Source: Euprymna scolopes (lineage: Eukaryota). Taken from it: DNA of 64,000 nt. Shown one piece after another: positions 1,410-52,710 of the stretch. Every line of letters begins with the position of its first letter. Positions within the stretch are counted from its first letter, which is position 1. The translations under genes and the position numbers were made by a program. The stretch lies in assembly GCA_053919585.1 (NCBI GenBank), contig CM132800.1; one strand, given 5' to 3'. The notes under the pieces are model-generated. The model did not search any database, was not told the origin of the DNA, and saw only the letters and a list, made by a program, of their open reading frames with translations.

Positions 1410-1850
1410 CTGTATGAGCGGCTGAAGCGCGATATTCGGAAGGGGAGGGTGAAATGGACCGTGGATGGTAGGGGGCGCCAAATTGGTCTGGAGTGTGCGG
1501 AAGTATATGTCTGAGCAGAGCTGGGCTGATGAGCACCAGTCTACTCATCGGCGCAGTGGGTCACAGAGCAGTCTTGAGTTGCCAAAGTTAACCTGTGTCA
1601 ACTGCGGGCGGGAGTACAAAACGGTAGGGGGTTTGAAACGGCATTTGATCCTGCATAAAAAAGAACATCAAGAACGTGCTGTTAATGGTGCACATGTCTG
1701 TGCAATGTTTGCTAAGGAATGCCAGAGTTTAGCAGGGCTTAAAAGCCACATTCGTGCGGCGCATCACTGAATGTTTTCGGGTTTCTATATACTTTTTTAT
1801 GTGCTATATCGAGTGATGGGAATGTTCGAAAGAGAATTTGCTGCCATCAT
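1410..1850 (+). mobile_element. 3' end of an RTE-clade LINE with C-terminal C2H2 zinc fingers
   Basis: ORF 1465-1770 has CVNC-x12-HLILH and a degenerate second finger (..SLAGLKSHIRAAHH); upstream frame RLKRDIRK..W resembles the RTE C-terminal helix; short 3' UTR ending gctgccatcatatata. Confidence 0.6.
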
Positions 1851-1863
1851 ATATAGATATATA

Positions 1864-2148
1864 AGATACGTTGGTGAAACCCAGCGTAAGTTCGAAGAAA
1901 GGCTCACTGAGCATAAAAAAGCTATAAAAAACAATAATTCTCTAAGTGCATTATTCTCTCATTCATTGCAGCATAATCATACCTTTTACTTGAAACAAGC
2001 AAAAATAGTTCAATTTATCTCAAATAAATCGCGCCGGGGACTTCTTGAATTAGCGCGTATCGCAAATTCAAGAACGATTAAACAGCGTGTAGGTTTCTAT
2101 AATGTTACACTATTAATAAGTAAACTTTTATTGAAAGAACATAATTAG
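1864..2148 (+). mobile_element. Penelope-like element GIY-YIG endonuclease C-terminal fragment
   Basis: YVGETQRKFEERLTEHKKAIKNNNSLSALFSHSLQHNHTF...RRGLLE matches the PLE YIGET-R-EH-SAL-H-H pattern. Confidence 0.8.
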
Positions 2149-22845: not shown

Positions 22846-23089
22846 TGCATGCATATGTGTGTATATATATATATATATATGTATGTCTGTTTGTGTATGC
22901 GTGGGTGGATGTATGTACAAAATCCACGATATTCCGTTATTTACTTACTGTGATCATTTGCTGGTTAACTTTTGACATCTCTGGTTTAATCACATGATGA
23001 AACCCTTGAGTAAGGTTAAGTTATAATAATATCTAAGAAGTAATTAAGTTATAATAATATCTGAAAATTCTTATTTTAACCACCCATTT

Positions 23090-23765
23090 CTTTTTTGTTC
23101 TACTGCTTCTATTTCGTCTTCTTCTCCTTCTTCTTATTCTCCTTCTTCTTCTCCTTCTTATTCTTATTCTTCTCCGTATTCTTTTTCTTTGTATTCTTCT
23201 TCTTTCCAGTTTCTTATTCTTTTTGTGCTTCTTACTAATGTCTATTTTTGTTGTTGCTTTTGTTGTCCATCTCCTTCTTATTCGTCTTTTTCTTCTTTTC
23301 TCTCTTCTTCTATCTTTAATTCTTTCAATTTATTATTTCTTTCTCTCCCTTTTCATACTCATTCTCCTAATTCACCTCTTGTACATTTTTCTACAATACT
23401 ACTGCTACGACTACTACTACTTCTACTACTACTACTTCCTTTCCTACCACCGTTTTTGTTTAATTCTGTCCATTGCATGTTTATTCTTCTTTATTTTCTT
23501 ACTCATTCCTGTATTACTTCTTATTTTTTTACGCCTTCACGTCGATATTATTCCATCATCCTAATAAACTGATTCTTCTTTCTCTTCTTTTTCAGTTTTT
23601 TCTTCCTTTTCCTTCTCTTTCTCCTTCTTCTTTTTCTTTTCTTTTTCTTCTTTTCTTCTTGTTCTTGTCTTCGCACTTATTATTCTCTCCATATTGTCCT
23701 TTTCACTTTTTTTCTCTTATTTCCTCATCCTATTTCTTCTTTTCCTCCCTTTTCAGTCTTTCTCG
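23090..23765. repeat. Pyrimidine-rich low-complexity tract, degenerate (TTC)n/(CTA)n
   Basis: Seen directly. Confidence 0.9.
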
Positions 23766-25757
23766 AAGCATAATTTCCCATGTGTTTTTATCACAAATAA
23801 ATCTACTCATTAAAATCATCCATTTGTTTCGTTTTTCGTTTTCCATTTCATTTTCTACCGAATGATTGATTGGCACATTTTCATACCAATAGTATTTTAC
23901 GCTTTCCCCATATCCATTAACTGGTTACCGATTTACGTTAATTCACACAGCCCGCCCACACATCATGTTCTAGTCGACGGAAATTGAGCAAGTGTAATCC
24001 AAGACAGTCTATGAAATAATATTGTTTTAGACGTTTCTTTTTTTATTCCAATGTCGCTGGAGTATAACATGAAAATGACTCAAATATTTTTTGAAAAAAA
24101 AAATCAATCTATCTTTTATTATCTGAAGCTAAGTTAATAAATATTTGTATCCCTAAAGCGTTTTCTCATATAATCGTAAAATACATTTTTCAGATGTCTC
24201 AAAGGAGGGGTTCAGCGATGTACCGTATTTATTGCCGATTTCGGGGTTCACATTATATCGGCTAGGACAACAACCACAAAATTATTTGCATCAGATTATC
24301 TCATTATTATATTATGGTCGGGCAATGTCGGATGTCTTTGATAGAGAGGTGAGTGACCGGTATTTGAAGTGGTAAAAATATTATAGAAATAACAAAGTGT
24401 TTTGATAACGAAAGAATGTTTAGAAACAGCACGTGAATGTAGAAATAATTATGCCAGAAATATGTAAATCAATAAATTTTTTAGAAGGTTGTTTCACAAA
24501 TAGGGCTGTTTAGTTTTAATAAACAAAGATACGTGACAAAGAACCAGGCCAATATTTGTGATTACCTAGATACATGACGTAACAAGATTAGAGACACTTT
24601 CGTTTTTAGAGTCTTTAACGGACGGCTGAGAGAGACTGTCGACAGATGAGATGGAACCCAGCAAGGACTAGATCGATGATCAAGATATAGACAGGAATGT
24701 ATCAACGTTCCCCCTGTCCTAGATGGAAACAATATTCTGAAATAAAGCTTGCCGAAATGAAACCCAAGTTCTGTTGGTCCTGGTAGAATGCTTGTTGCAG
24801 GTTTCCGTCAAACAAGCTCAAAGATGGGCGAAGTGTCTTTCCTAACTGGCCGTCTGTTGTAACCCCATAGAATAGTACCCATCCTTATCAAGAGACAAGG
24901 ATGTTTATTCGTCCGCTATTTTTCGTTTTATACGGACATACACCAGTAAGTTTTTGTGACATTTTGGAAACTAGGCGATCACACGTAAATACATCTAAGA
25001 AGGGCAGACGCACAATCATTAAGGCACTCGTTACATACACGTTTGTATATGTACAGAATATATACACACTCACACGGGAATACAACATATCGCCGTTTTG
25101 ATACCCCGCTATACTGCAGGTATAACCGTTTGGTGCCGTTTTAAAACTTCTTTATATTACATCATTAAATACTATCAACTACGTGTGTCGATATTGCAAA
25201 AGAAAATCGTGTCCTGAAAATTGTCTTTTTAACGACGTGAAATCAGACATCAGCCAATGAGCCAAATTTAACATGTAGTGTAAAAAATACACAAAACTCT
25301 AAATTACTTTTCAATCCGTCTTTAGATTTTCATCACTAAAAGCACATGTTTAAATATTCCCCAACGTTTGAGAAAACTTCTATTTCAATTGTTCTAATGA
25401 GACGTAATTCGAAACTAACTCCTTAATTGACCCATCTCTTATCCATCAGTCTCACTTTCTTTCTCACTGACTGTATTTTAATCAATTTTAATCAATTTTC
25501 CCAACGCTATTAATTTATACGTCATCTTTTACTTTCGCTTTCAACAAATTTCGGTTCTATGTTTATAAAAGCCGACGGAAGAAAAGAGAGATTAGAAGAG
25601 ATGACGTATATTATATATCTGTTGTATTATAAAGAGAATCGTGTATGATTGTTTTATCAGACTTAATGTCGTGTATGATCGTCTAACTGTTCTTTCTATT
25701 AAATATGTTCATATGCTTTTAAGTGTGAATGTGCGATACATGCATTTTCAGACATAC

Positions 25758-25842
25758 CGCTGCTTCTTCGATGTTGGTCCATCTGGAATCTCTCGTCCTG
25801 GAGGGAAGACTTGGTACCTCTTTTGGACGAAGATTTATGTTT
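25758..25842 (-). CDS. Candidate coding exon (85 nt), unknown gene
   Basis: ..tatccag| acceptor, |gtatgt donor, GC-richer than flanks, open frame NINLRPKEVPSLPSRTRDSRWTNIEEAA phase-compatible with 26792-26866. Confidence 0.35.
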
Positions 25843-25904
25843 CTGGATATTTGAGATGAGGATTGAGAATGTGTAATATTTCGATTATTCGAACTACTGT
25901 TCTA

Positions 25905-26480
25905 ATCTTGAGTGTTATTCTCACAATATTTTTGTCGGTATAATCTATGAGCTTGTTCAATAAATTAATATACAATAAATATTAGCTTATTGTATTAAGT
26001 AGTGATCGATTGTAATAAATAGTAGTCTATTGTAATAACTTGTAAGATTGTAATACAATAACAAGAATGGGTTTAAAGATCATAAACTGCATAAGAGAAG
26101 TCAACACAAAGGTTCACAACATAATAGAACTCAACACAATGGTTCACAATATAATAGAACTCAACACAATGGTTCACAACATAATAGAACTCAACACAAT
26201 GGTTCACAACATAATAGAACTCAACACAATGGTTCACAACATAATACAACTCAACACAAAGGTTCACAACATAATAAAACTCAACACAATGGTTCACAAC
26301 ATAATAAAACTCAACACAATGGTTCACAACATAATAAAACTCAACACAATGGTTCACAACATAATAAAATTCAACACAATGGTTCAGAACACGAATAAAG
26401 CACTGCATAATCTTCAGTTCTAAGTAACAAATGAGCATGGTCGAAAGTACCAATCCGCAGATGCTTAGAATACAAATGTG
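25905..26480. repeat. Interspersed repeat; second copy ~28645-28950
   Basis: Shared ctcacaatattt..gagcttgt.caataaatt..taaatagta..ctattgta..aagattgtaa. Confidence 0.8.
26091..26390. repeat. 30-bp minisatellite x10
   Basis: (ataatagaactcaacacaatggttcacaac)n. Confidence 0.97.
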
Positions 26481-26791
26481 AATTACTTAAAATTTTTCAC
26501 CGGTCATATCTAACGAAATTTGAGCATGCTGCCCCAGTGGATTAACTAAAGGGTTCCGTTCGAATTTCCGTCCCGATTTTCTCGTTCGACAGAAAAAAAC
26601 TGTACCCCCATCTGACGGTGCTTACCGCAACATTATAATCGTTTCAACTGTTGTTTTAAAATAGTGCGATGCTTACTATTGTTCTAATTGTATGATAATT
26701 GTGCTATATATTATATAAGATGTTGATTGATGTTAACAAGAGCGCACTATTAAAAATCTAGTAAAAAAAACAATAATTAATACATACTTAC

Positions 26792-26866
26792 TTAATCAAG
26801 TCTGCATTCTTAAGATTGCCTTTGAGTTTGTAGTAGAACCATCTTCCTGACGTAGATTTCTTTTTC
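26792..26866 (-). CDS. Candidate coding exon (75 nt), unknown gene
   Basis: tttttttatag| acceptor, |gtaagt donor; only one open frame, KKKSTSGRWFYYKLKGNLKNADLI. Confidence 0.35.
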
Positions 26867-27569
26867 CTATAAAAAAATATACGTGATATAAATGAGAATT
26901 GTTTAATTAAAATTATAAATGATTAAGAAATAAATTATAAATCAAATTTTTAATTTGTAACCCATTGGTTCTAAACTACTATTCCACGGTATATTAGTGT
27001 AATATGTACCGCTGCATTATTACTTGTGCACATTGAGGATATAATAGTTACGAGCTATAGTATTGCTTTTCGATATTTCAAAGATGATTTATTTCTTAAT
27101 CATGATGATATCTTGGTAGATTTTGTAAACACATCTTAATGAATGCTTTTTCTTTATTAAAGAAATTATTAGGTTAAATACAGAAAAGTTTCGACAGATC
27201 TGCCGTTTAGTTGTAAAAGCGAGTTCTTGAGTGAGATAGTTAAACATCCTTGTAGTCGAACCAGCTATACGCAAAGCAGAAATGAAAAGATCTTAGGGCA
27301 GCATATAAATTAATTATATTTAAGATGAAAGTAACAATATGTAAGGAAAGAAAGATATTTTTATTAGCGAGCATTTTACATTATTAGAAAATAAAACTGA
27401 AGAGCGTTTTCCATTATCCACATTGAACAATTTGATTATAATCGCAATCTATTCTTAGATTTAAAACTTTTCAATTTTCTACTTTGCAGTTACCATTTAT
27501 CAAGGCTCGAACGTTATTCGAGGATATGTAAGGTAGTAATAATCACTAATGGTTTAGATTGGGTTAAAT

Positions 27570-39574: not shown

Positions 39575-39950
39575 AAGAATAAGAGCAATAGACGCAAGAA
39601 ACTGAATCTGGTTTATCCACCTTTCAGTGAACATATACAACATGATAGCTCTCAAGAAATTTACAAAATAGTTGATAATAACTTCTCCACGGAAATAGAT
39701 TAACTAAAATAATTAAAAATAACACAGTTAAACTTTCATTTTCAGCCGCTGTGAATCTAAGTAAAACTATAATAAGTTCTAATAATAGTAAAATAGACAA
39801 AATAAGAATGAATCAGGTGAATTAAATATTGAGAATATATGTTACTGTAGAATATCTAATAAATGTCCATTGGAGGGAAATTGCTTATTTTCTGAAATTG
39901 TATACAAATTTGAAGTTAAGGTAGATAAGAGTAAAAAGATATAGGAGGAA
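39575..39950 (+). mobile_element. Penelope-like (Neptune/Naiad-type) ORF fragment, RT-EN linker
   Basis: VYPPFS..IVDNNF..NNTVKLSFS..CYCRISNKCPLEGNCLFSEIVYKFEV fits the PPFS/NTIKVSYS/CNCR-CPL-GNC pattern. Confidence 0.75.
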
Positions 39951-47325: not shown

Positions 47326-47510
47326 ATAGTAAAACTTTATAAACTAATTAAATAGGCTAAATTGATTTAGAAAATGGTAGCAAATACGATGGTAAGATGT
47401 ATCTAAATTAATATATAATATGAACAAGGAAGTTAAGTATGATTATAAATGTCACATAGTATAATACTTAATTGTAGAGTAATAAATAAGAGCATGCATC
47501 TACATATATA

Positions 47511-49141
47511 CAGTGATGATCATATTTATTGGCACGGTAAAATAAAAGTTAAATTTTGTCTAATAAATTCTAAAAAAGGGATTAAATTAAAGAAAATAAC
47601 AAAGTATATTATGTATTTTTAACTGGCCTTTCCGATGCAGCAATCGGATTTTAGAAAAAATAAATAACAAAGGAACAACAAACATAATTGCAAAAAACCC
47701 TTGTTCAAAATTATTGGCACGATTTATTTAATAATCAATTGTATAGCCTTTGGCCTTGATTACCTTCCTCAGTCGCTTTTCATAGTTTACAACCAAGTTG
47801 TTGCACTCTTCAGTAGTAATTTTAGCCCACTCTTCCTGACAATAATCTTCCAATTGAATAAGATTCTTAGGCTTCCTTTGCATTACCCTCAATTTTAATG
47901 TTCTCCATAAATTTTCAATTGGATTAAGTCTGGGCTTTGTGATGGCCACTCCAAAACATTAATATGATTGTCCTCAAGCCATTTCTTAGTCAGTTTAGCC
48001 GAATGCTTTGGGTCATTATCTTGCATGAACCACCAACGACGACCAAGTGAGAGCTCTTTAGCAGAGTCTTTCAGGTTTTCATCCAATATTTTAACATAAT
48101 CTTCCTTTTTTATGCTACCTGTGACCTTAACAAGTCGCCCTGGTCCAGAGGCAGCAAAGAATCCCCAAAACATCAAACTGCCTCCACCGTGCTTCACTGT
48201 GGGTATGGTGTTCTTAGGCAGGAAAGCTTCGCCAGATTTTCGGTAGATATAAGACACTTTATTATGGCCAAATAACTCTATTTTCGTTTCGTCAGTCCAT
48301 ATAACATGTTTCCAGAATGCAACATCTTTATCAATATGACGTTTTGCAAAGGCTAGCCTTGCTTTCAGGTGCATAGGCTTCAATAAGGGAGTCTTTCTCG
48401 GACGACATGCTTTTAAACCAGCTCTCTTCAAAACTCTACCAACTGTATGTCGAGATACATTCACTCCAGAGGTGCTCTGTTCATCAACAATCTCTCCAAC
48501 AGAGATCCTTGGGTTTTGTTTTACTTGTCGAACAATTTTCCGTTCATCTCTTGGGGAAAGAATCCTTTTTCTCCCTCTACCCTCTAAACTCATAACGTGG
48601 CCTTGCGATTTGAACTTGTTTATTATGGCTCTAACAGTGGATTTGGGAAGGTTTAGCTTCTTTGAAATCTTATCATAGCCCTCCCCATTGGTATGGCATG
48701 CAACAACAAGCTTCCTGACGTCTTCGCTGTGTTCCTTAGTTTTAACCATGGCGATTGAAATTATAATTTAGTCACTTATAATAGTTTAAATAAATCGCTA
48801 TCTAAAAATTATCTGAAAAAAATTATTCACTGAATTAGCGTTAAACAAGCATAATATGGCTATAAAAAAGTTCAGAAAGCACGTAAACCGGAAATTGATT
48901 GATATTATACTGATACTAAAAGAAAAACAAAGCCGTGCCAATAATTTTGAACAAGGGCTTTTTGCAATTATGTTTGTTGTTCCTTTGTTATTTATTTTTT
49001 CTAAAATCCGATTGCTGCATCGGAAAGGCCAGTTAAAAATACATAATATACTTTGTTATTTTCTTTAATTTAATCCCTTTTTTAGAATTTATTAGACAAA
49101 ATTTAACTTTTATTTTACCGTGCCAATAAATATGATCATCA

Positions 49142-49144
<3 letters not shown>
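47511..49144 (-). mobile_element. Very young full-length IR/DR Tc1 (1634 bp, 211-bp TIRs)
   Basis: TIRs 47511-47721 and 48934-49144 differ at one position I could find; attggcacg DRs; TA flanks. Confidence 0.97.
47728..48749 (-). pseudogene. Tc1 transposase, apparent 1-bp deletion near 47925
   Basis: [50 protein letters not shown]. Confidence 0.95.
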
Positions 49145-49223
<79 letters not shown>

Positions 49224-49346
49224 CCTTAATTGGAATTCATTTTTGGAGATGAGCATTATATATAGTAATTTATTTTTTATTTCGGACTATTATTCTAATC
49301 TTTATTAGTTGTTGTTTTTCATCTTTTTTATTGGCTGTTGTTTTTT

Positions 49347-49388
49347 CACGACGTTTCGGTCAACTATTCCTCTGGCCTTCGTCAGGTG
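49347..49388 (-). ncRNA. Minimal type I hammerhead ribozyme
   Basis: cac-CTGACGA-a-ggcca-gaggaatagt-tgacc-GAAA-c-GTC-gtg; complete core and GUC cleavage triplet. Confidence 0.8.
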
Positions 49389-49610
49389 GTAACCGCGACG
49401 GATAGGAACTTCGCATCTTCTAACTGCATTCTCACCAACCACTGCCATCTGTAATTGGAATTACTATATATACTCCTCATCTCAAAAATGAATTCCAATT
49501 AAGGAATAATATATATATATACCAATCGGTACGGACCCGACTATGAAAGATCAGATAATAAATAAATGTGGATTTATAAGATCAAAGAATCCAACCTTGA
49601 TCGCCCTTCG

Positions 49611-49701
49611 GGGCCCGTGGCGCAGTTTATAGAGACGTCGAATCTCTACGGTTCCAGGTGGACATTGTTTGAAGACAGCGGTTTCAATCCTACCCAAAGC
49701 C
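49611..49701 (+). ncRNA. tRNA-derived SINE head (Pol III A/B boxes), not a functional tRNA
   Basis: GGGCCCG-TGGCGCAGTTT (A box-like) ... GGTTTCAATCC (B box-like, 49680-49690). Confidence 0.6.
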
Positions 49702-49810
49702 AGCCAGAGGTTTACTTGGCCAAAACGTGGTAAGACGACAACAACTACAGATGGCAGTGATTGCTGAGAATGCAGTTAGGAGATTCGAGGTCCCTATCCG
49801 TCGCGGTTAC

Positions 49811-49852
49811 CACCTGACGAAGACCAGAGGAATAGTTGGCCAAAACGTTGTG
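49811..49852 (+). ncRNA. Degenerate hammerhead ribozyme (second arm)
   Basis: cac-CTGACGA-a-gacca..tggcc-AAAA-c-GTT-gtg; GAAA>AAAA and GTC>GTT are CpG transitions. Confidence 0.7.
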
Positions 49853-50260
49853 AAAAAACAACAACCAATAAAAAAGATGAAAAACAACAACTAATAAAAA
49901 TGAAAATAATAAAAATAAATTACTATAGCATGCGTCTATATTATATACTTATGCACGCAGGAAAAATTATGCATGCAGGAAAAATTTAATACAAAATTAG
50001 ATTAGGGAATAGCAGTGGACAATGGCATAATAGATTATTTTATTGCTATACTAATTAAGTGATTTATTTTGCGCTACGAAGCAGATACTTTCAAGAATTG
50101 TAAATGTCAACTGAACTAAAGGAATAAATAATAAGACGGTCAATATCATGAATTTTTGGAATATAGTTTTAGTCATTTATTCACTATATTGCTTCGTAAT
50201 TACATTGAGCTTCTTAAATAAGTATTCGTATATATTATAAGAAAATATATTTCTACAGAA

Positions 50261-50340
<80 letters not shown>

Positions 50341-50715: not shown

Positions 50716-52229
50716 TTATTTTAAATTTGTCTTTCGATCTAGATGTGTACTTGTATCGATTATTATGAACTCAAACTGAGGTTTATGTATGTCTCAGAAT
50801 CGAGGAATTCAGATTCGAACTAAAAAATCTAATTGGAAAATAACATTTTGTTTTTTCTCATTGTTTGGAGGTTTCAATTATTGATTCAATTTTTTTTTCT
50901 CTCATAATAACGTATTGTAAAACACTTAATAAAATTCATGGAAAATATTACAAAATATATATTTCTATGATAAAAATATTCATAAATTTGTCCTAATTAA
51001 TAAAATAATTCTCAGAGACTGTATCTTTTTATGTAACAGGCGTTTATATTAAACTAGCATACCTCCCGGTGTTGACCAGTCAGAAGATACGCTTAAATAT
51101 GATATATTATATCATGCAGATTACGTATTTATTATTATAGACAATTCGGTATTGATTATTATATTGTACCCAATCTATAGTAGTGAGATGAAACTAAAAT
51201 ACATGTATATGACTTGGGCGGCATCAGCTAGAATCAGAACCAAAACAAGCAACTCTCCACTTTCATCCCTTAACCCCTNNNNNNNNNNNNNNNNNNNNNN
51301 NNNNNNNNNNNNNNNNNNNNNNNNNNNNNNNNNNNNNNNNNNNNNNNNNNNNNNNNNNNNNNNNNNNNNNNNNNNNNNNNNNNNNNNNNNNNNNNNNNNN
51401 NNNNNNNNNNNNNNNNNNGGGTTTAGGGATGAAAGTGGAGAGTATATATATGCACTAGACTACTCGTGACCCGTTGAGTCAGTATATTATATTAGCTATA
51501 GAATTGATGTATGAGCGTGCCGCTTGTGACGTAAAGAAAATAGTTTTTTTTTTACATAACAGAAACATTTCTATGAAAGTATATTAAAATGAAAAGAGAA
51601 TATAGATAGATTTCTATGAGTCGTTCTGTTTTCTATTAATGCTTATTTTTGAAAAGATTTTTTTACAGTTACTGAATTATAAGTGGTTGGCCATAATTAT
51701 AGGTAAATGTACACTAAACAGATACCATAATACTTAATATAGTTAAATTCAAATTTTGAAATATCTGCTTTTTTTTTTACATCGTTCATTGCTGTATTAC
51801 GTTTAAGCTATTTTAAACCTCACTCTTTCTATGCTAAATAATAATATCAAAATAATAACGTTAAGGTTTCAGCGTCCTAATTGTTATTTTTTCGCGTTTA
51901 AATTATCCCAATAAACAATTGTTAATACTGTATGTTTCTTTTACATCATTCATTTCTGTATTACGTTTAAGGTATTTTAGACCGCACTCTTCCCATGTTA
52001 AATAATAATTTCGAAATAATAAGTTCATATTTCAGTGCGCATTTCATGTCGTAAACCGGAAAGTGGGTTACATACATNNNNNNNNNNNNNNNNNNNNNNN
52101 NNNNNNNNNNNNNNNNNNNNNNNNNNNNNNNNNNNNNNNNNNNNNNNNNNNNNNNNNNNNNNNNNNNNNNNNNNNNNNNNNNNNNNNNNNNNNNNNNNNN
52201 NNNNNNNNNNNNNNNNNNNNNNNNNNNNN

Positions 52230-52710
52230 ATTTTCATAAGCTACAAATCAGTACGCCCTACCCTATAAAAATAGGCTATGCTACAAATGAAACAAACCGC
52301 ATGATCACCTCCGTTAGGAAATTTCAACAAGTCCTCAAACAAAATTAATACCCTTCACAAACGCTACAGCGCATTAATACATCGAACAGAAAACAACCAC
52401 ACACACTATCCAACACATGCTTTCTCAAAAATACCGTATATATTCAGTGTATCCAGTCCAATGCACCATATGCAATGAGTCATACATGAGAAGTTCAATC
52501 AGACCGTTGCATATATTGATCAAAGAACGCATTACCAAAAAGACTTTGTCTTTTTACAAAAACCTTTCTCACAACCCTATAATAAAAATATAATTGCAAC
52601 TGAAATAGATCAAGGAAACCTCAGATTAAAAGAACCGATATTGATCAAAAATTTAAAACCAAAAATTTATAATAAAACCGAAAAATCTAACATCTTCCTA
52701 ATAAAGACAC
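52230..52710 (+). mobile_element. Decayed Penelope-like GIY-YIG fragment
   Basis: QCTICNESYMRSSIRPLHILIKE ... LRLKEPILIKNLKPKIYNK. Confidence 0.7.

What the first reader, a model, noticed from the sequence alone, without database searches (positions are those of the whole stretch)
49218..49940. tRNA-headed SINE carrying hammerhead ribozymes, inserted with a Penelope-style inverted arm
Seen: tRNA-like head (49611-49701), a partial hammerhead unit (49702-49745), a full unit (49811-49852), and an inverted copy of the 3' ~190 bp upstream whose hammerhead core is intact (49347-49388, minus). A 12/14 direct repeat (47491 / 49927) brackets the insert plus a Tc1 that probably entered its TA run later. 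Known: minimal type I hammerheads and inverted 5' arms are Penelope-like element hallmarks; Pol III hammerhead repeats exist (schistosome Sm-alpha). Inference: a Pol III-transcribed, self-cleaving non-coding element mobilised by a PLE, possibly an undescribed family. PLE ORF remnants occur at 1864, 39575 and 52230.
Basis: partly seen in the sequence, partly recalled or inferred. Interest (0 to 1): 0.85.

Follow-up and report, generated by a model that had tools for sequence, protein, structure and literature searches.

The report
Penelope-type hammerhead retroelement, dead copy
This is an old, inactive copy of a very abundant short non-coding jumping element of a mollusc; it carries a Penelope-type mini hammerhead ribozyme motif and the mirror-image insertion scar that Penelope-like retrotransposons leave, but its supposed tRNA-like promoter head is only weakly supported.

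Summary
The repeats are real. A 170-nt inverted repeat (91%; 197 nt with gaps) joins 49261-49457(-) to 49742-49927(+), and a ~15-bp target duplication (47491/49927) brackets the insert. The Tc1, with 100% identical 217-nt ends, entered later.

Each arm holds a minimal hammerhead: CUGACGA, one extra A, a 5-bp helix II, GAAA, an ACGU palindrome, H17 and a 3-bp helix I. The minus-arm copy keeps the whole core. The plus copy has G12>A.

This matches the published Penelope (PLE) min-HHR, including features outside its descriptor. Rfam hammerhead models do not match it.

New here: a ~50-bp end block "E" lies at the outer end of the inverted arm and again, in plus orientation, before the plus copy, each time next to (TA)n. 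The plus copy's own 3' end keeps only E's first 10 nt. That matches the PLE "tail extension".

Reads from other copies link head to tail, and family-majority letters repair both helix II mismatches.

The "tRNA head" is two box-like motifs only. tRNA models fail, and the family extends ~90 nt further 5'.

PolyA RNA reads show no cleavage ends.

The scan found this family before on other DNA of this genome. Verdict: a variant of known kinds; Pol III drive and self-cleavage are unproven.

The parts
47491..47505 (.). left copy of the target-site duplication (AGCATGCATCTACAT)
47511..49146 (-). Tc1/mariner element inserted later into the TA run; not part of the element
   Evidence: 217-nt 100% terminal inverted repeats; 284-aa transposase ORF, 94% identical to P0001
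49147..49219 (.). (TA)~37 run adjoining the outer end of the inverted arm
49220..49270 (-). end block E (about 50 bp), the 3'-terminal extension of the inverted copy
   Evidence: 39-nt perfect inverted repeat 49207-49245/49483-49521; 94.5% over 55 nt
49261..49457 (-). inverted 5'-truncated copy: body 3' part, min-HHR and A-rich tail
49347..49388 (-). minimal hammerhead with intact core; C17 at 49350, CUGACGA at 49385-49379; one helix II mismatch (49360), which is C in the family majority
49459..49508 (+). second copy of end block E, in plus orientation, between the inverted arm and the plus copy
49509..49522 (.). short (TA)n after E(+)
49523..49610 (+). 5' leader shared with other family copies
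   Evidence: contigs of other copies reach 49516-49533; homologous loose end at 49569
49611..49701 (+). head with A-box-like (49618-49628) and B-box-like (49680-49690) motifs; not recognisable as a tRNA
49702..49745 (+). partial repeat of the hammerhead's 3' half (helix II 3' strand, AAAAC, GUG); no CUGANGA, and G at position 17
   Evidence: D2
49746..49810 (+). body; 49780-49797 is an inverted copy of head 49628-49645 (16/18)
49811..49852 (+). decayed minimal hammerhead: G12>A at 49842, helix II mismatch at 49823 (G in the family majority), U17 at 49849
49853..49927 (+). A-rich tail with a 26-bp internal duplication, ending in the first 10 nt of E (AATTACTATA)
   Evidence: (D4)
49927..49941 (.). 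right copy of the target-site duplication (AGCATGCGTCTATAT)

Best explanation
This is one old, dead insertion of a very abundant short non-coding retroelement of a mollusc. The 3' part of the element is a Penelope-like-element (PLE) type end: a minimal hammerhead motif, an A-rich tail, a ~50-bp terminal block E and (TA)n.

Inferred mechanism: an RNA of the element was copied in trans by a PLE reverse transcriptase/GIY-YIG endonuclease at a TA-rich target. As is usual for PLEs, the event left:
- a more-than-unit-length plus copy, running E-(TA)n-leader-head-body-HHR-tail-E' (E' = only the first 10 nt of E);
- a 5'-truncated inverted copy directly upstream;
- the full terminal extension E on one side only;
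- a ~15-bp target duplication.

The hammerhead is of the kind thought to act only as a dimer. Here the plus copy is inactivated (G12>A, a CpG-type change), while the inverted arm keeps the core.

The head has A-box-like and B-box-like motifs that could drive RNA polymerase III, but this is unproven. A Tc1 transposon later landed in the flanking TA run.

Shown: the repeats, the motif architecture, the TSD, family abundance, head-tail linkage, and the later Tc1 entry. Inferred: PLE mobilisation, a single insertion event, and any ribozyme or Pol III activity.
For: Anatomy and insertion scars:
- Inverted arms, 91-92% identical.
- Both arms share a 26-bp tail duplication that many family copies lack (loose ends at 49317; D4/D5), so they are sister copies.
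- E stands at 49220-49270(-) and 49459-49508(+), while the plus 3' end stops 10 nt into E. This fits 'an inverted 5'-truncated copy adjacent at the 5' end' and 'a 30-40-bp extension at one end' in PMC8557442 section 6, which also reports (TA)n as a target.
- The TSD brackets the whole composite.

Hammerhead motif:
[quoted passage not shown] That paper also reports dual motifs 100-700 bp apart on opposite strands.
- It is the only hit in the window; 0.025 are expected by chance.
- The same descriptor finds a hammerhead ~300 nt downstream of a real PLE-type ORF in L002, and L003 shows the same CUGAUGA-A-5-bp-helix II-GAAA build.

Family evidence:
- The family-majority letters 49360 T>C and 49823 A>G restore a perfect GGCCA/UGGCC helix II, and loose-end consensus reads GGCCGAAACGTCGTG.
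- Tens of thousands of contigs and thousands of reads lay on the stretch.
- Contigs of other copies bridge head to tail (table 8).
- Exact words of the element occur in DNA runs of six organism labels and in 'mollusc metagenome' RNA runs.
Against: - No Rfam hammerhead hit, even on a 66-nt slice.
- No autonomous PLE with this tail was found. The window's PLE remnants share no DNA with it.
- No start or end pile-ups at the predicted cleavage sites in two polyA RNA runs.
- Thermodynamic folding does not favour the active fold.
- Only this locus could be read as DNA. Family statements rest on read pile-ups at 80% likeness.
- The arm is flanked by TA runs on both sides, so a second, separate insertion next to the first cannot be excluded.
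Confidence: 0.7

Rival explanations
1. The family is not an independent SINE. It is simply the 3' end (pLTR/3' UTR) of an autonomous PLE, left as heavily 5'-truncated or solo copies, and the A/B-box-like motifs are incidental.
For: PLE insertions are strongly 5'-truncated (PMC8557442). Read depth falls stepwise towards the 5' end, about 1170, 808, 460, 275 and 194 over 49696 to 49512. The box motifs are weak and tRNA models fail.
Against: Contigs of other copies end or branch at 49516-49526. E-(TA)n, not an ORF, precedes the leader here. Depth also falls towards the 3' end, which plain 5' truncation would not give. A related copy read in RNA starts within 1-2 nt of a perfect A-box head (TGGCGCAGTGG) directly after an inverted arm (table 5c).
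Confidence: 0.2
2. The family is a true Pol III-transcribed, tRNA-derived SINE that parasitises a PLE and is processed by its own hammerhead.
For: A-box-like and B-box-like motifs lie 51 bp apart, and the family-majority letter at 49628 improves the A box to one mismatch. A relative has a perfect A box at the very 5' end. There is no TTTT on the plus strand 49523-49927. The Sm-alpha elements of schistosomes are a precedent (PMC6765202, PMC2770079).
Against: There is no cloverleaf or tRNA-model match. The absence of TTTT is expected for this T-poor strand. The ~88-nt leader upstream of the boxes is copied in the family, which an internal promoter would not transcribe. Strand depth over the head is equal, and no cleavage ends were seen.
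Confidence: 0.3
3. There were two separate events. A plus copy inserted first, and a second 5'-truncated copy with its own 50-bp inverted end later landed in the (TA)n beside it.
For: The arm 49220-49508 is flanked by TA runs on both sides within a perfect 39-nt inverted repeat. The family appears to favour (TA)n.
Against: The TSD encloses both parts. Both arms share a subfamily-specific 26-bp duplication and a rare variant (49450/49749). Earlier notes say the inverted pairing is the rule for this family (s1-280695, untested here).
Confidence: 0.15
4. It is a DNA-level foldback or MITE element with terminal inverted repeats, unrelated to retrotransposition.
For: 50-bp inverted ends and TA flanks of 49220-49508.
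Against: The A-rich tail, the asymmetry (the head is present on one side only), a 15-bp TSD that is not at the inverted-repeat ends, and the hammerhead of PLE build.
Confidence: 0.04

Closest known systems
Minimal hammerheads (min-HHR) of Penelope-like elements, in pLTRs and dispersed truncated copies (Cervera & de la Pena 2014, PMC4209133)
   Same: [quoted passage not shown]
   Different: Here the motif sits in a ~405-460-bp non-coding unit that also carries Pol III box-like motifs. Helix II is 5-6 bp, against 7-8 bp in schistosomes. No PLE ORF is attached.
Sm-alpha / Sj-alpha SINE-like retroposons of schistosomes (Ferbeyre 1998, as reviewed in PMC6765202; PMC2770079)
   Same: A short, abundant non-coding retroelement that combines a Pol III-type head with a type I hammerhead.
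   Different: The Sm-alpha head is recognised as tRNA-Gln-like by tRNAscan, and its hammerhead is canonical and matches Rfam. Here tRNA and Rfam hammerhead models both fail, the hammerhead is the helix-III-less PLE type, and the insertion has PLE-type inverted scars. The host is a mollusc, not a flatworm.
Metazoan non-LTR retrozymes, e.g. the 350-390-bp repeats of Mytilus (PMC7229834; bioRxiv 10.64898/2026.07.22.740005)
   Same: Small AT-rich non-coding units with a type I hammerhead, thought to depend on PLEs. The unit here appears circularly continuous, because E-(TA)n is followed by a constant sequence in other copies.
   Different: Retrozymes occur as tandem arrays with a full ribozyme per unit and give abundant circular RNA. 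This locus has one full plus-strand motif, no tandem array, and no back-joined reads that I could assign to a circle.
Structural scars of PLE insertions: pLTR, inverted 5'-truncated copy, 30-40-bp tail (Craig et al. 2021, PMC8557442)
   Same: All three scars are present, together with a (TA)n association.
   Different: That description concerns 3-4-kb autonomous elements. The (TA)n preference was described for Naiads, which lack canonical hammerheads.

Membership tests
Hammerhead ribozyme (Rfam Hammerhead_1/3/HH9/HH10/II) | Match to a curated covariance model (three helices around the core) | tested here: not met
   No hit at gathering score or at E<=10, even on a 66-nt slice
Hammerhead ribozyme (Rfam Hammerhead_1/3/HH9/HH10/II) | Conserved core C3 U4 G5 A6 N7 G8 A9 ... 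G12 A13 A14 ... H17 | tested here: met
   Complete in the minus arm, 49385-49350. The plus copy has A at position 12 (49842)
Hammerhead ribozyme (Rfam Hammerhead_1/3/HH9/HH10/II) | Self-cleavage after H17 | tested here: inconclusive
   No read start or end pile-ups in two polyA RNA runs, but such libraries are poorly suited to the test.
PLE minimal hammerhead (Cervera & de la Pena 2014) | No helix III hairpin; palindromic 15.x-16.x that allows a dimeric helix III | tested here: met
   GAA-ACGU-C with no loop (PMC4209133)
PLE minimal hammerhead (Cervera & de la Pena 2014) | [quoted passage not shown] | tested here: met
   CUGACGA-A-GGCCA...UGGCC-GAAA. Family-majority letters restore all 5 pairs
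PLE minimal hammerhead (Cervera & de la Pena 2014) | Location in the terminal repeat of an element that encodes PLE RT and GIY-YIG | tested here: not met
   No ORF in or next to the unit. The window's PLE remnants share no DNA with it
PLE minimal hammerhead (Cervera & de la Pena 2014) | Compensatory changes in the helices across family members | not testable with these tools
   No other copies could be fetched as DNA
PLE-type insertion | Inverted 5'-truncated copy adjoining the 5' end | tested here: met
   49261-49457(-) against 49742-49927(+)
PLE-type insertion | 30-40-bp tail extension at one end only | tested here: met
   E is complete at the arm's outer end, while only 10 nt of it stand at the plus 3' end. 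It is somewhat longer than described (43-50 bp) and is also present internally
PLE-type insertion | Target-site duplication of variable, longer-than-LTR length | tested here: met
   12/14 to ~18/20 direct repeat; beats 300/300 shuffles
tRNA-derived SINE | Head recognisable as tRNA-derived | tested here: not met
   ARAGORN and the Rfam tRNA model give nothing. Only inconsistent calls appear at 70-80% ARAGORN thresholds
tRNA-derived SINE | Internal A and B boxes at functional spacing | tested here: inconclusive
   9/11 and 9/11 matches, 51 bp apart. Eleven such pairs occur in the window against 3.9 by chance. The family-majority letter gives a 10/11 A box
tRNA-derived SINE | Head at the 5' terminus of the unit | tested here: not met
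   Other copies share ~88 nt upstream of the head, with contigs reaching 49516-49533. A related copy does start at the head (table 5c)
tRNA-derived SINE | 3' tail shared with an autonomous partner | tested here: inconclusive
   No partner was found in the window or in the fetched PLE loci L002 and L003. The genome itself could not be searched
Metazoan non-LTR retrozyme | Tandem units, each with a full hammerhead, and circular RNA | tested here: not met
   The plus strand has one full and one partial unit. No assignable circular junction was seen

The most novel reading that the evidence does not exclude
The family is a genuine Pol III-driven SINE that borrows Penelope machinery. It would be the first such partnership outside flatworms. 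It would also replicate through more-than-unit-length or circular RNA trimmed by a dimer-only minimal hammerhead. This would explain why E-(TA)n is followed by a constant sequence in other copies and why inverted pairs are the rule.
Probability: 0.25. Interest if true: 0.7.

Novelty: new variant of a known kind. Interest (0 to 1): 0.42.

Why it matters
The function of PLE minimal hammerheads is still unknown, and they cleave poorly in vitro. An abundant, short, non-coding mollusc family that keeps the motif, the terminal block and the insertion scars gives a compact system for asking what PLE enzymes recognise and what the ribozyme does. The family is also a major repeat in these genomes and can confuse assembly and annotation. 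This particular copy is dead and has no evident effect on its surroundings.

Tried and rejected
- Rfam at gathering score and at E<=10 on 901-, 113- and 66-nt slices gave no hammerhead or tRNA hit.
- ARAGORN on the window and on the head with family-majority letters gave nothing credible.
- Self-BLAST found no other copy in the window.
- Fetching more copies failed by every route. A metagenome pattern scan gave one chance bacterial hit, L001. Three viral-contig scans gave none. The Tc1 transposase route led only to short contigs or was not on record. Using an element ORF as a 'protein' query found no candidates.
- The partner search found no partner. The GIY-YIG remnant at 1771-2148 finds PLE-type proteins at no more than 43% identity. 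Their contigs L002 and L003 carry their own min-HHRs but share no DNA with this element, so they served only as positive controls for the descriptor.
- Pfam on ten nearby ORFs gave only a zinc finger.
- RNA folding was not informative for the ribozyme. The unit folds with z = -2.5 through a head-body inverted repeat, and a homodimer cofold prefers an inactive pairing of the core.
- 'No TTTT' on the plus strand was rejected as evidence, because the strand is only 20% T.

Full report
OBSERVATION

- The repeat finder gives an inverted repeat 49288-49457 / 49742-49911 (170 nt, 91%) and a direct repeat 49704-49745 / 49824-49865 (42 nt, 81%).
- blastn extends the arms to 49261-49457 and 49742-49927.
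- MAFFT gives 92% identity with one 11-nt indel in the tail.
- The window holds no other copy.
- The flanks share AGCATGC[A/G]TCTA[C/T]AT at 47491 and 49927. This alignment beats 300 of 300 shuffles.
- The Tc1 at 47511-49146 lies between the left duplication and the TA run. Its terminal inverted repeats are 100% identical over 217 nt, whereas the element's arms differ by 8-9%. The Tc1 is therefore clearly the later arrival.

1. The end block E.
- A ~50-bp block, which I call E, begins AATTACTATATATA and ends GAATTCCAATTAAGGAATA.
- It stands at the outer end of the inverted arm (49220-49270, minus sense).
- It stands again in plus sense at 49459-49508, between the arm and the plus copy.
- The two copies form a perfect 39-nt inverted repeat and are 94.5% identical over 55 nt.
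- Each copy is followed by (TA)n: about 37 repeats outside, 6-7 inside.
- The plus copy's own 3' end stops after the first 10 nt of E and runs straight into the target duplication.

2. The leader. The family does not begin at the 'head'. Contigs from other copies reach 49516-49533, and a loose-end consensus upstream of 49569 is homologous to this copy's 49539-49568. An ~88-nt leader (49523-49610) therefore belongs to the unit.

3. An internal inverted repeat. The body contains an inverted copy of part of the head (49628-49645 against 49780-49797, 16/18; 0 of 300 shuffles reach this score). This gives the unit RNA a long stem (MFE z = -2.5).

4. A shared duplication. Both arms carry a 26-bp tail duplication (D4/D5) that many other copies lack (loose ends at 49317). 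The two arms are therefore sister copies.

THE HAMMERHEAD

On the minus arm the motif reads as follows:
- helix I, 5' strand: CAC;
- core: CUGACGA;
- one extra A;
- helix II: GGCCA, a 10-nt loop, UGACC;
- GAA;
- the palindrome ACGU;
- C17;
- helix I, 3' strand: GUG.

C17 is at 49350.

Rfam's hammerhead models do not match it, even when given only 66 nt. This is expected, because there is no helix III hairpin.

It does match the minimal hammerhead that Cervera and de la Pena defined for Penelope-like elements, including the features they stress were not in their search descriptor:
- a G10.1-C11.1 pair;
- palindromic 15.x-16.x;
- a short helix I;
- frequent pairs of motifs 100-700 bp apart on opposite strands (PMC4209133).

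I wrote a relaxed descriptor for this architecture. It hits only this site in 64 kb on both strands, against 0.025 hits per shuffled window.

As positive controls:
- The descriptor finds a hammerhead about 300 nt downstream of a PLE-type ORF in L002.
- L003 shows the same CUGAUGA-A-5-bp-helix II-GAAA build ahead of the next ORF.

The plus copy (49811-49852) has three changes:
- A at position 12;
- U at position 17 (both are CpG-type changes);
- a helix II mismatch.

It is dead as a ribozyme.

The 'partial unit' has no CUGANGA and has G at position 17.

THE HEAD

ARAGORN and the Rfam tRNA model find nothing, including with the five family-majority letters put in.

What remains is an A-box-like motif at 49618-49628 and a B-box-like motif at 49680-49690, each matching 9 of 11 positions and lying 51 bp apart. 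Pairs of this quality occur 11 times in the window against 3.9 in shuffles, so this copy alone proves little.

Two things help somewhat:
- The family-majority letter at 49628 makes the A box 10/11.
- One related copy seen in RNA reads has a perfect TGGCGCAGTGG within 8-9 nt of a junction with an inverted arm (table 5c).

There is no TTTT on the plus strand of the unit, but that strand is only 20% T, so the absence is expected.

FAMILY EVIDENCE FROM PUBLIC READS

The element's exact 31-mers occur in RNA runs of 'organism A', in 'mollusc metagenome' runs, and in DNA runs under six organism labels.

I laid two Logan contig sets and two raw polyA RNA runs on 49216-50300 at 80% likeness. This placed 23,000-27,000 contigs and about 8,500 reads per run. 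The results were:

- Linkage. Contigs of other copies bridge 49526-49698, 49636-49797, 49681-49835 and 49719-49852. Head and hammerhead tail are therefore linked elsewhere.
- Helix II. The majority letters 49360 T>C and 49823 A>G repair the single helix II mismatch in each arm, giving GGCCA/UGGCC. Loose-end consensus reads GGCCGAAACGTCGTG.
- What follows E. Reads that end in E continue, after a short TA run, with a fairly constant sequence (279 and 284 reads, agreement 0.70-0.74). E-(TA)n is therefore usually followed by element sequence, not random flank. This suggests that more-than-unit-length or tandem-like copies are the norm.
- No cleavage ends. No place shows many molecules beginning or ending, so these libraries give no evidence for cleavage in vivo.
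- Strand depth. Depth is equal on both strands over head and body. Over the leader it is 2-2.7 times higher for first mates on the minus strand in both runs. If the libraries are conventionally stranded, this means a sense-strand excess upstream of any internal Pol III start.

HOW IT MOST LIKELY AROSE

The composite lies inside one target duplication. It consists of an inverted 5'-truncated copy ending in E-(TA)n, then E-(TA)n, then a full plus copy that keeps only the start of E.

This matches the published picture of PLE insertions: partial tandems, an inverted 5'-truncated copy at the 5' end, a 30-40-bp tail at one end, and (TA)n as a frequent target (PMC8557442).

I infer trans-mobilisation by a PLE reverse transcriptase/GIY-YIG endonuclease, with a template switch producing the inverted arm. 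I give the 'PLE-type non-autonomous element' reading about 0.7.

Within that reading I give roughly 0.3 to a real Pol III SINE and 0.2 to the alternative that the family is merely the truncated 3' end of an autonomous PLE. An earlier, untested note (s1-295599) reports a GIY-YIG remnant directly followed by such a head and hammerhead.

A two-step origin, with a second copy landing in the TA run, is possible. It is disfavoured by the enclosing duplication and by the variants the two arms share.

COMPARISON AND NOVELTY

- The ribozyme works like, and by sequence criteria belongs with, the PLE minimal hammerheads.
- The closest whole-element analogue is Sm-alpha of schistosomes, which joins a Pol III head to a hammerhead (PMC6765202, PMC2770079). 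It differs in having a canonical ribozyme and a head that tRNA finders recognise.
- Metazoan retrozymes are tandem and circular (PMC7229834). This locus is neither.
- Five literature searches found no description of a mollusc element that combines these parts.
- The scan itself has already reported the same family from other windows of this genome (s1-279844, s1-280695 and others), with follow-ups reaching a similar verdict.

I rate it a new variant of known kinds, of moderate interest. This copy is an inactive fossil.

SIDE CLAIM: PLE REMNANTS IN THE WINDOW

- 1771-2148(+) encodes a GIY-YIG domain. Its homologues are 750-870-aa proteins with a reverse transcriptase domain.
- 52440-52540(+) looks like a decayed GIY-YIG with the CC motif.
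- I saw nothing at 39575.
- None of these shares DNA with the element.

Noticed in passing
window 47511-49146: A young Tc1/mariner copy with 217-nt, 100% identical terminal inverted repeats. Its 284-aa transposase ORF is 94% identical to P0001, but homologues are 340 aa, so the N-terminus is probably broken here.
   Followed up: partly
window 1465-2148 (+): A C-terminal piece of a Penelope-like ORF: a C2H2/C2HC-like zinc finger (1465-1770) followed by a GIY-YIG domain (1771-2148). The best homologues (<=43% identity) are 750-870-aa proteins carrying a reverse transcriptase domain. No hammerhead was seen downstream; instead there are ~125-bp tandem repeats at about 2290-2640.
   Followed up: partly
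window 52440-52540 (+), beside the gap 52079-52229: A decayed GIY-YIG-like stretch with the two cysteines typical of canonical PLE endonucleases. The downstream 700 bp shows no hammerhead.
   Followed up: partly
window 50030-50250: Another abundant repeat family just downstream of the element. Read depth is 100-350 in both polyA RNA runs, with many family-majority differences. It is unrelated in sequence to the element.
   Followed up: no
window 49628-49645 vs 49780-49797: The element's body contains an inverted copy of part of its own head (16/18). This gives the unit RNA a long internal stem. It may be a fossil of an earlier head-to-head insertion fixed in the master copy.
   Followed up: partly
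window 49769 -> 49638 (table 5c): Logan contigs in both X1 and X2 (word depth ~200) join 49769 back to 49638 with one T between. Some relative therefore has a ~132-nt tandem or circular form of the head-core region.
   Followed up: no
window 49512-49622: Over the leader only, first mates on the minus strand outnumber those on the plus strand 2-2.7 fold in both polyA RNA runs. The head and body are 1:1. No explanation was tested.
   Followed up: no
L002 1546-1574 (+) and its repeat near 1676; L003 ~1640-1680 (+): Two metagenome contigs encoding PLE-type proteins carry minimal hammerheads in their 3' regions. L002 has CUGAAGA-U-GCUU..AAGC-GAAA-ACAUGU-A in a repeated pLTR. L003 has CUGAUGA-A-AGCUU..AAGCU-GAAA just ahead of the next ORF.
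   Followed up: partly
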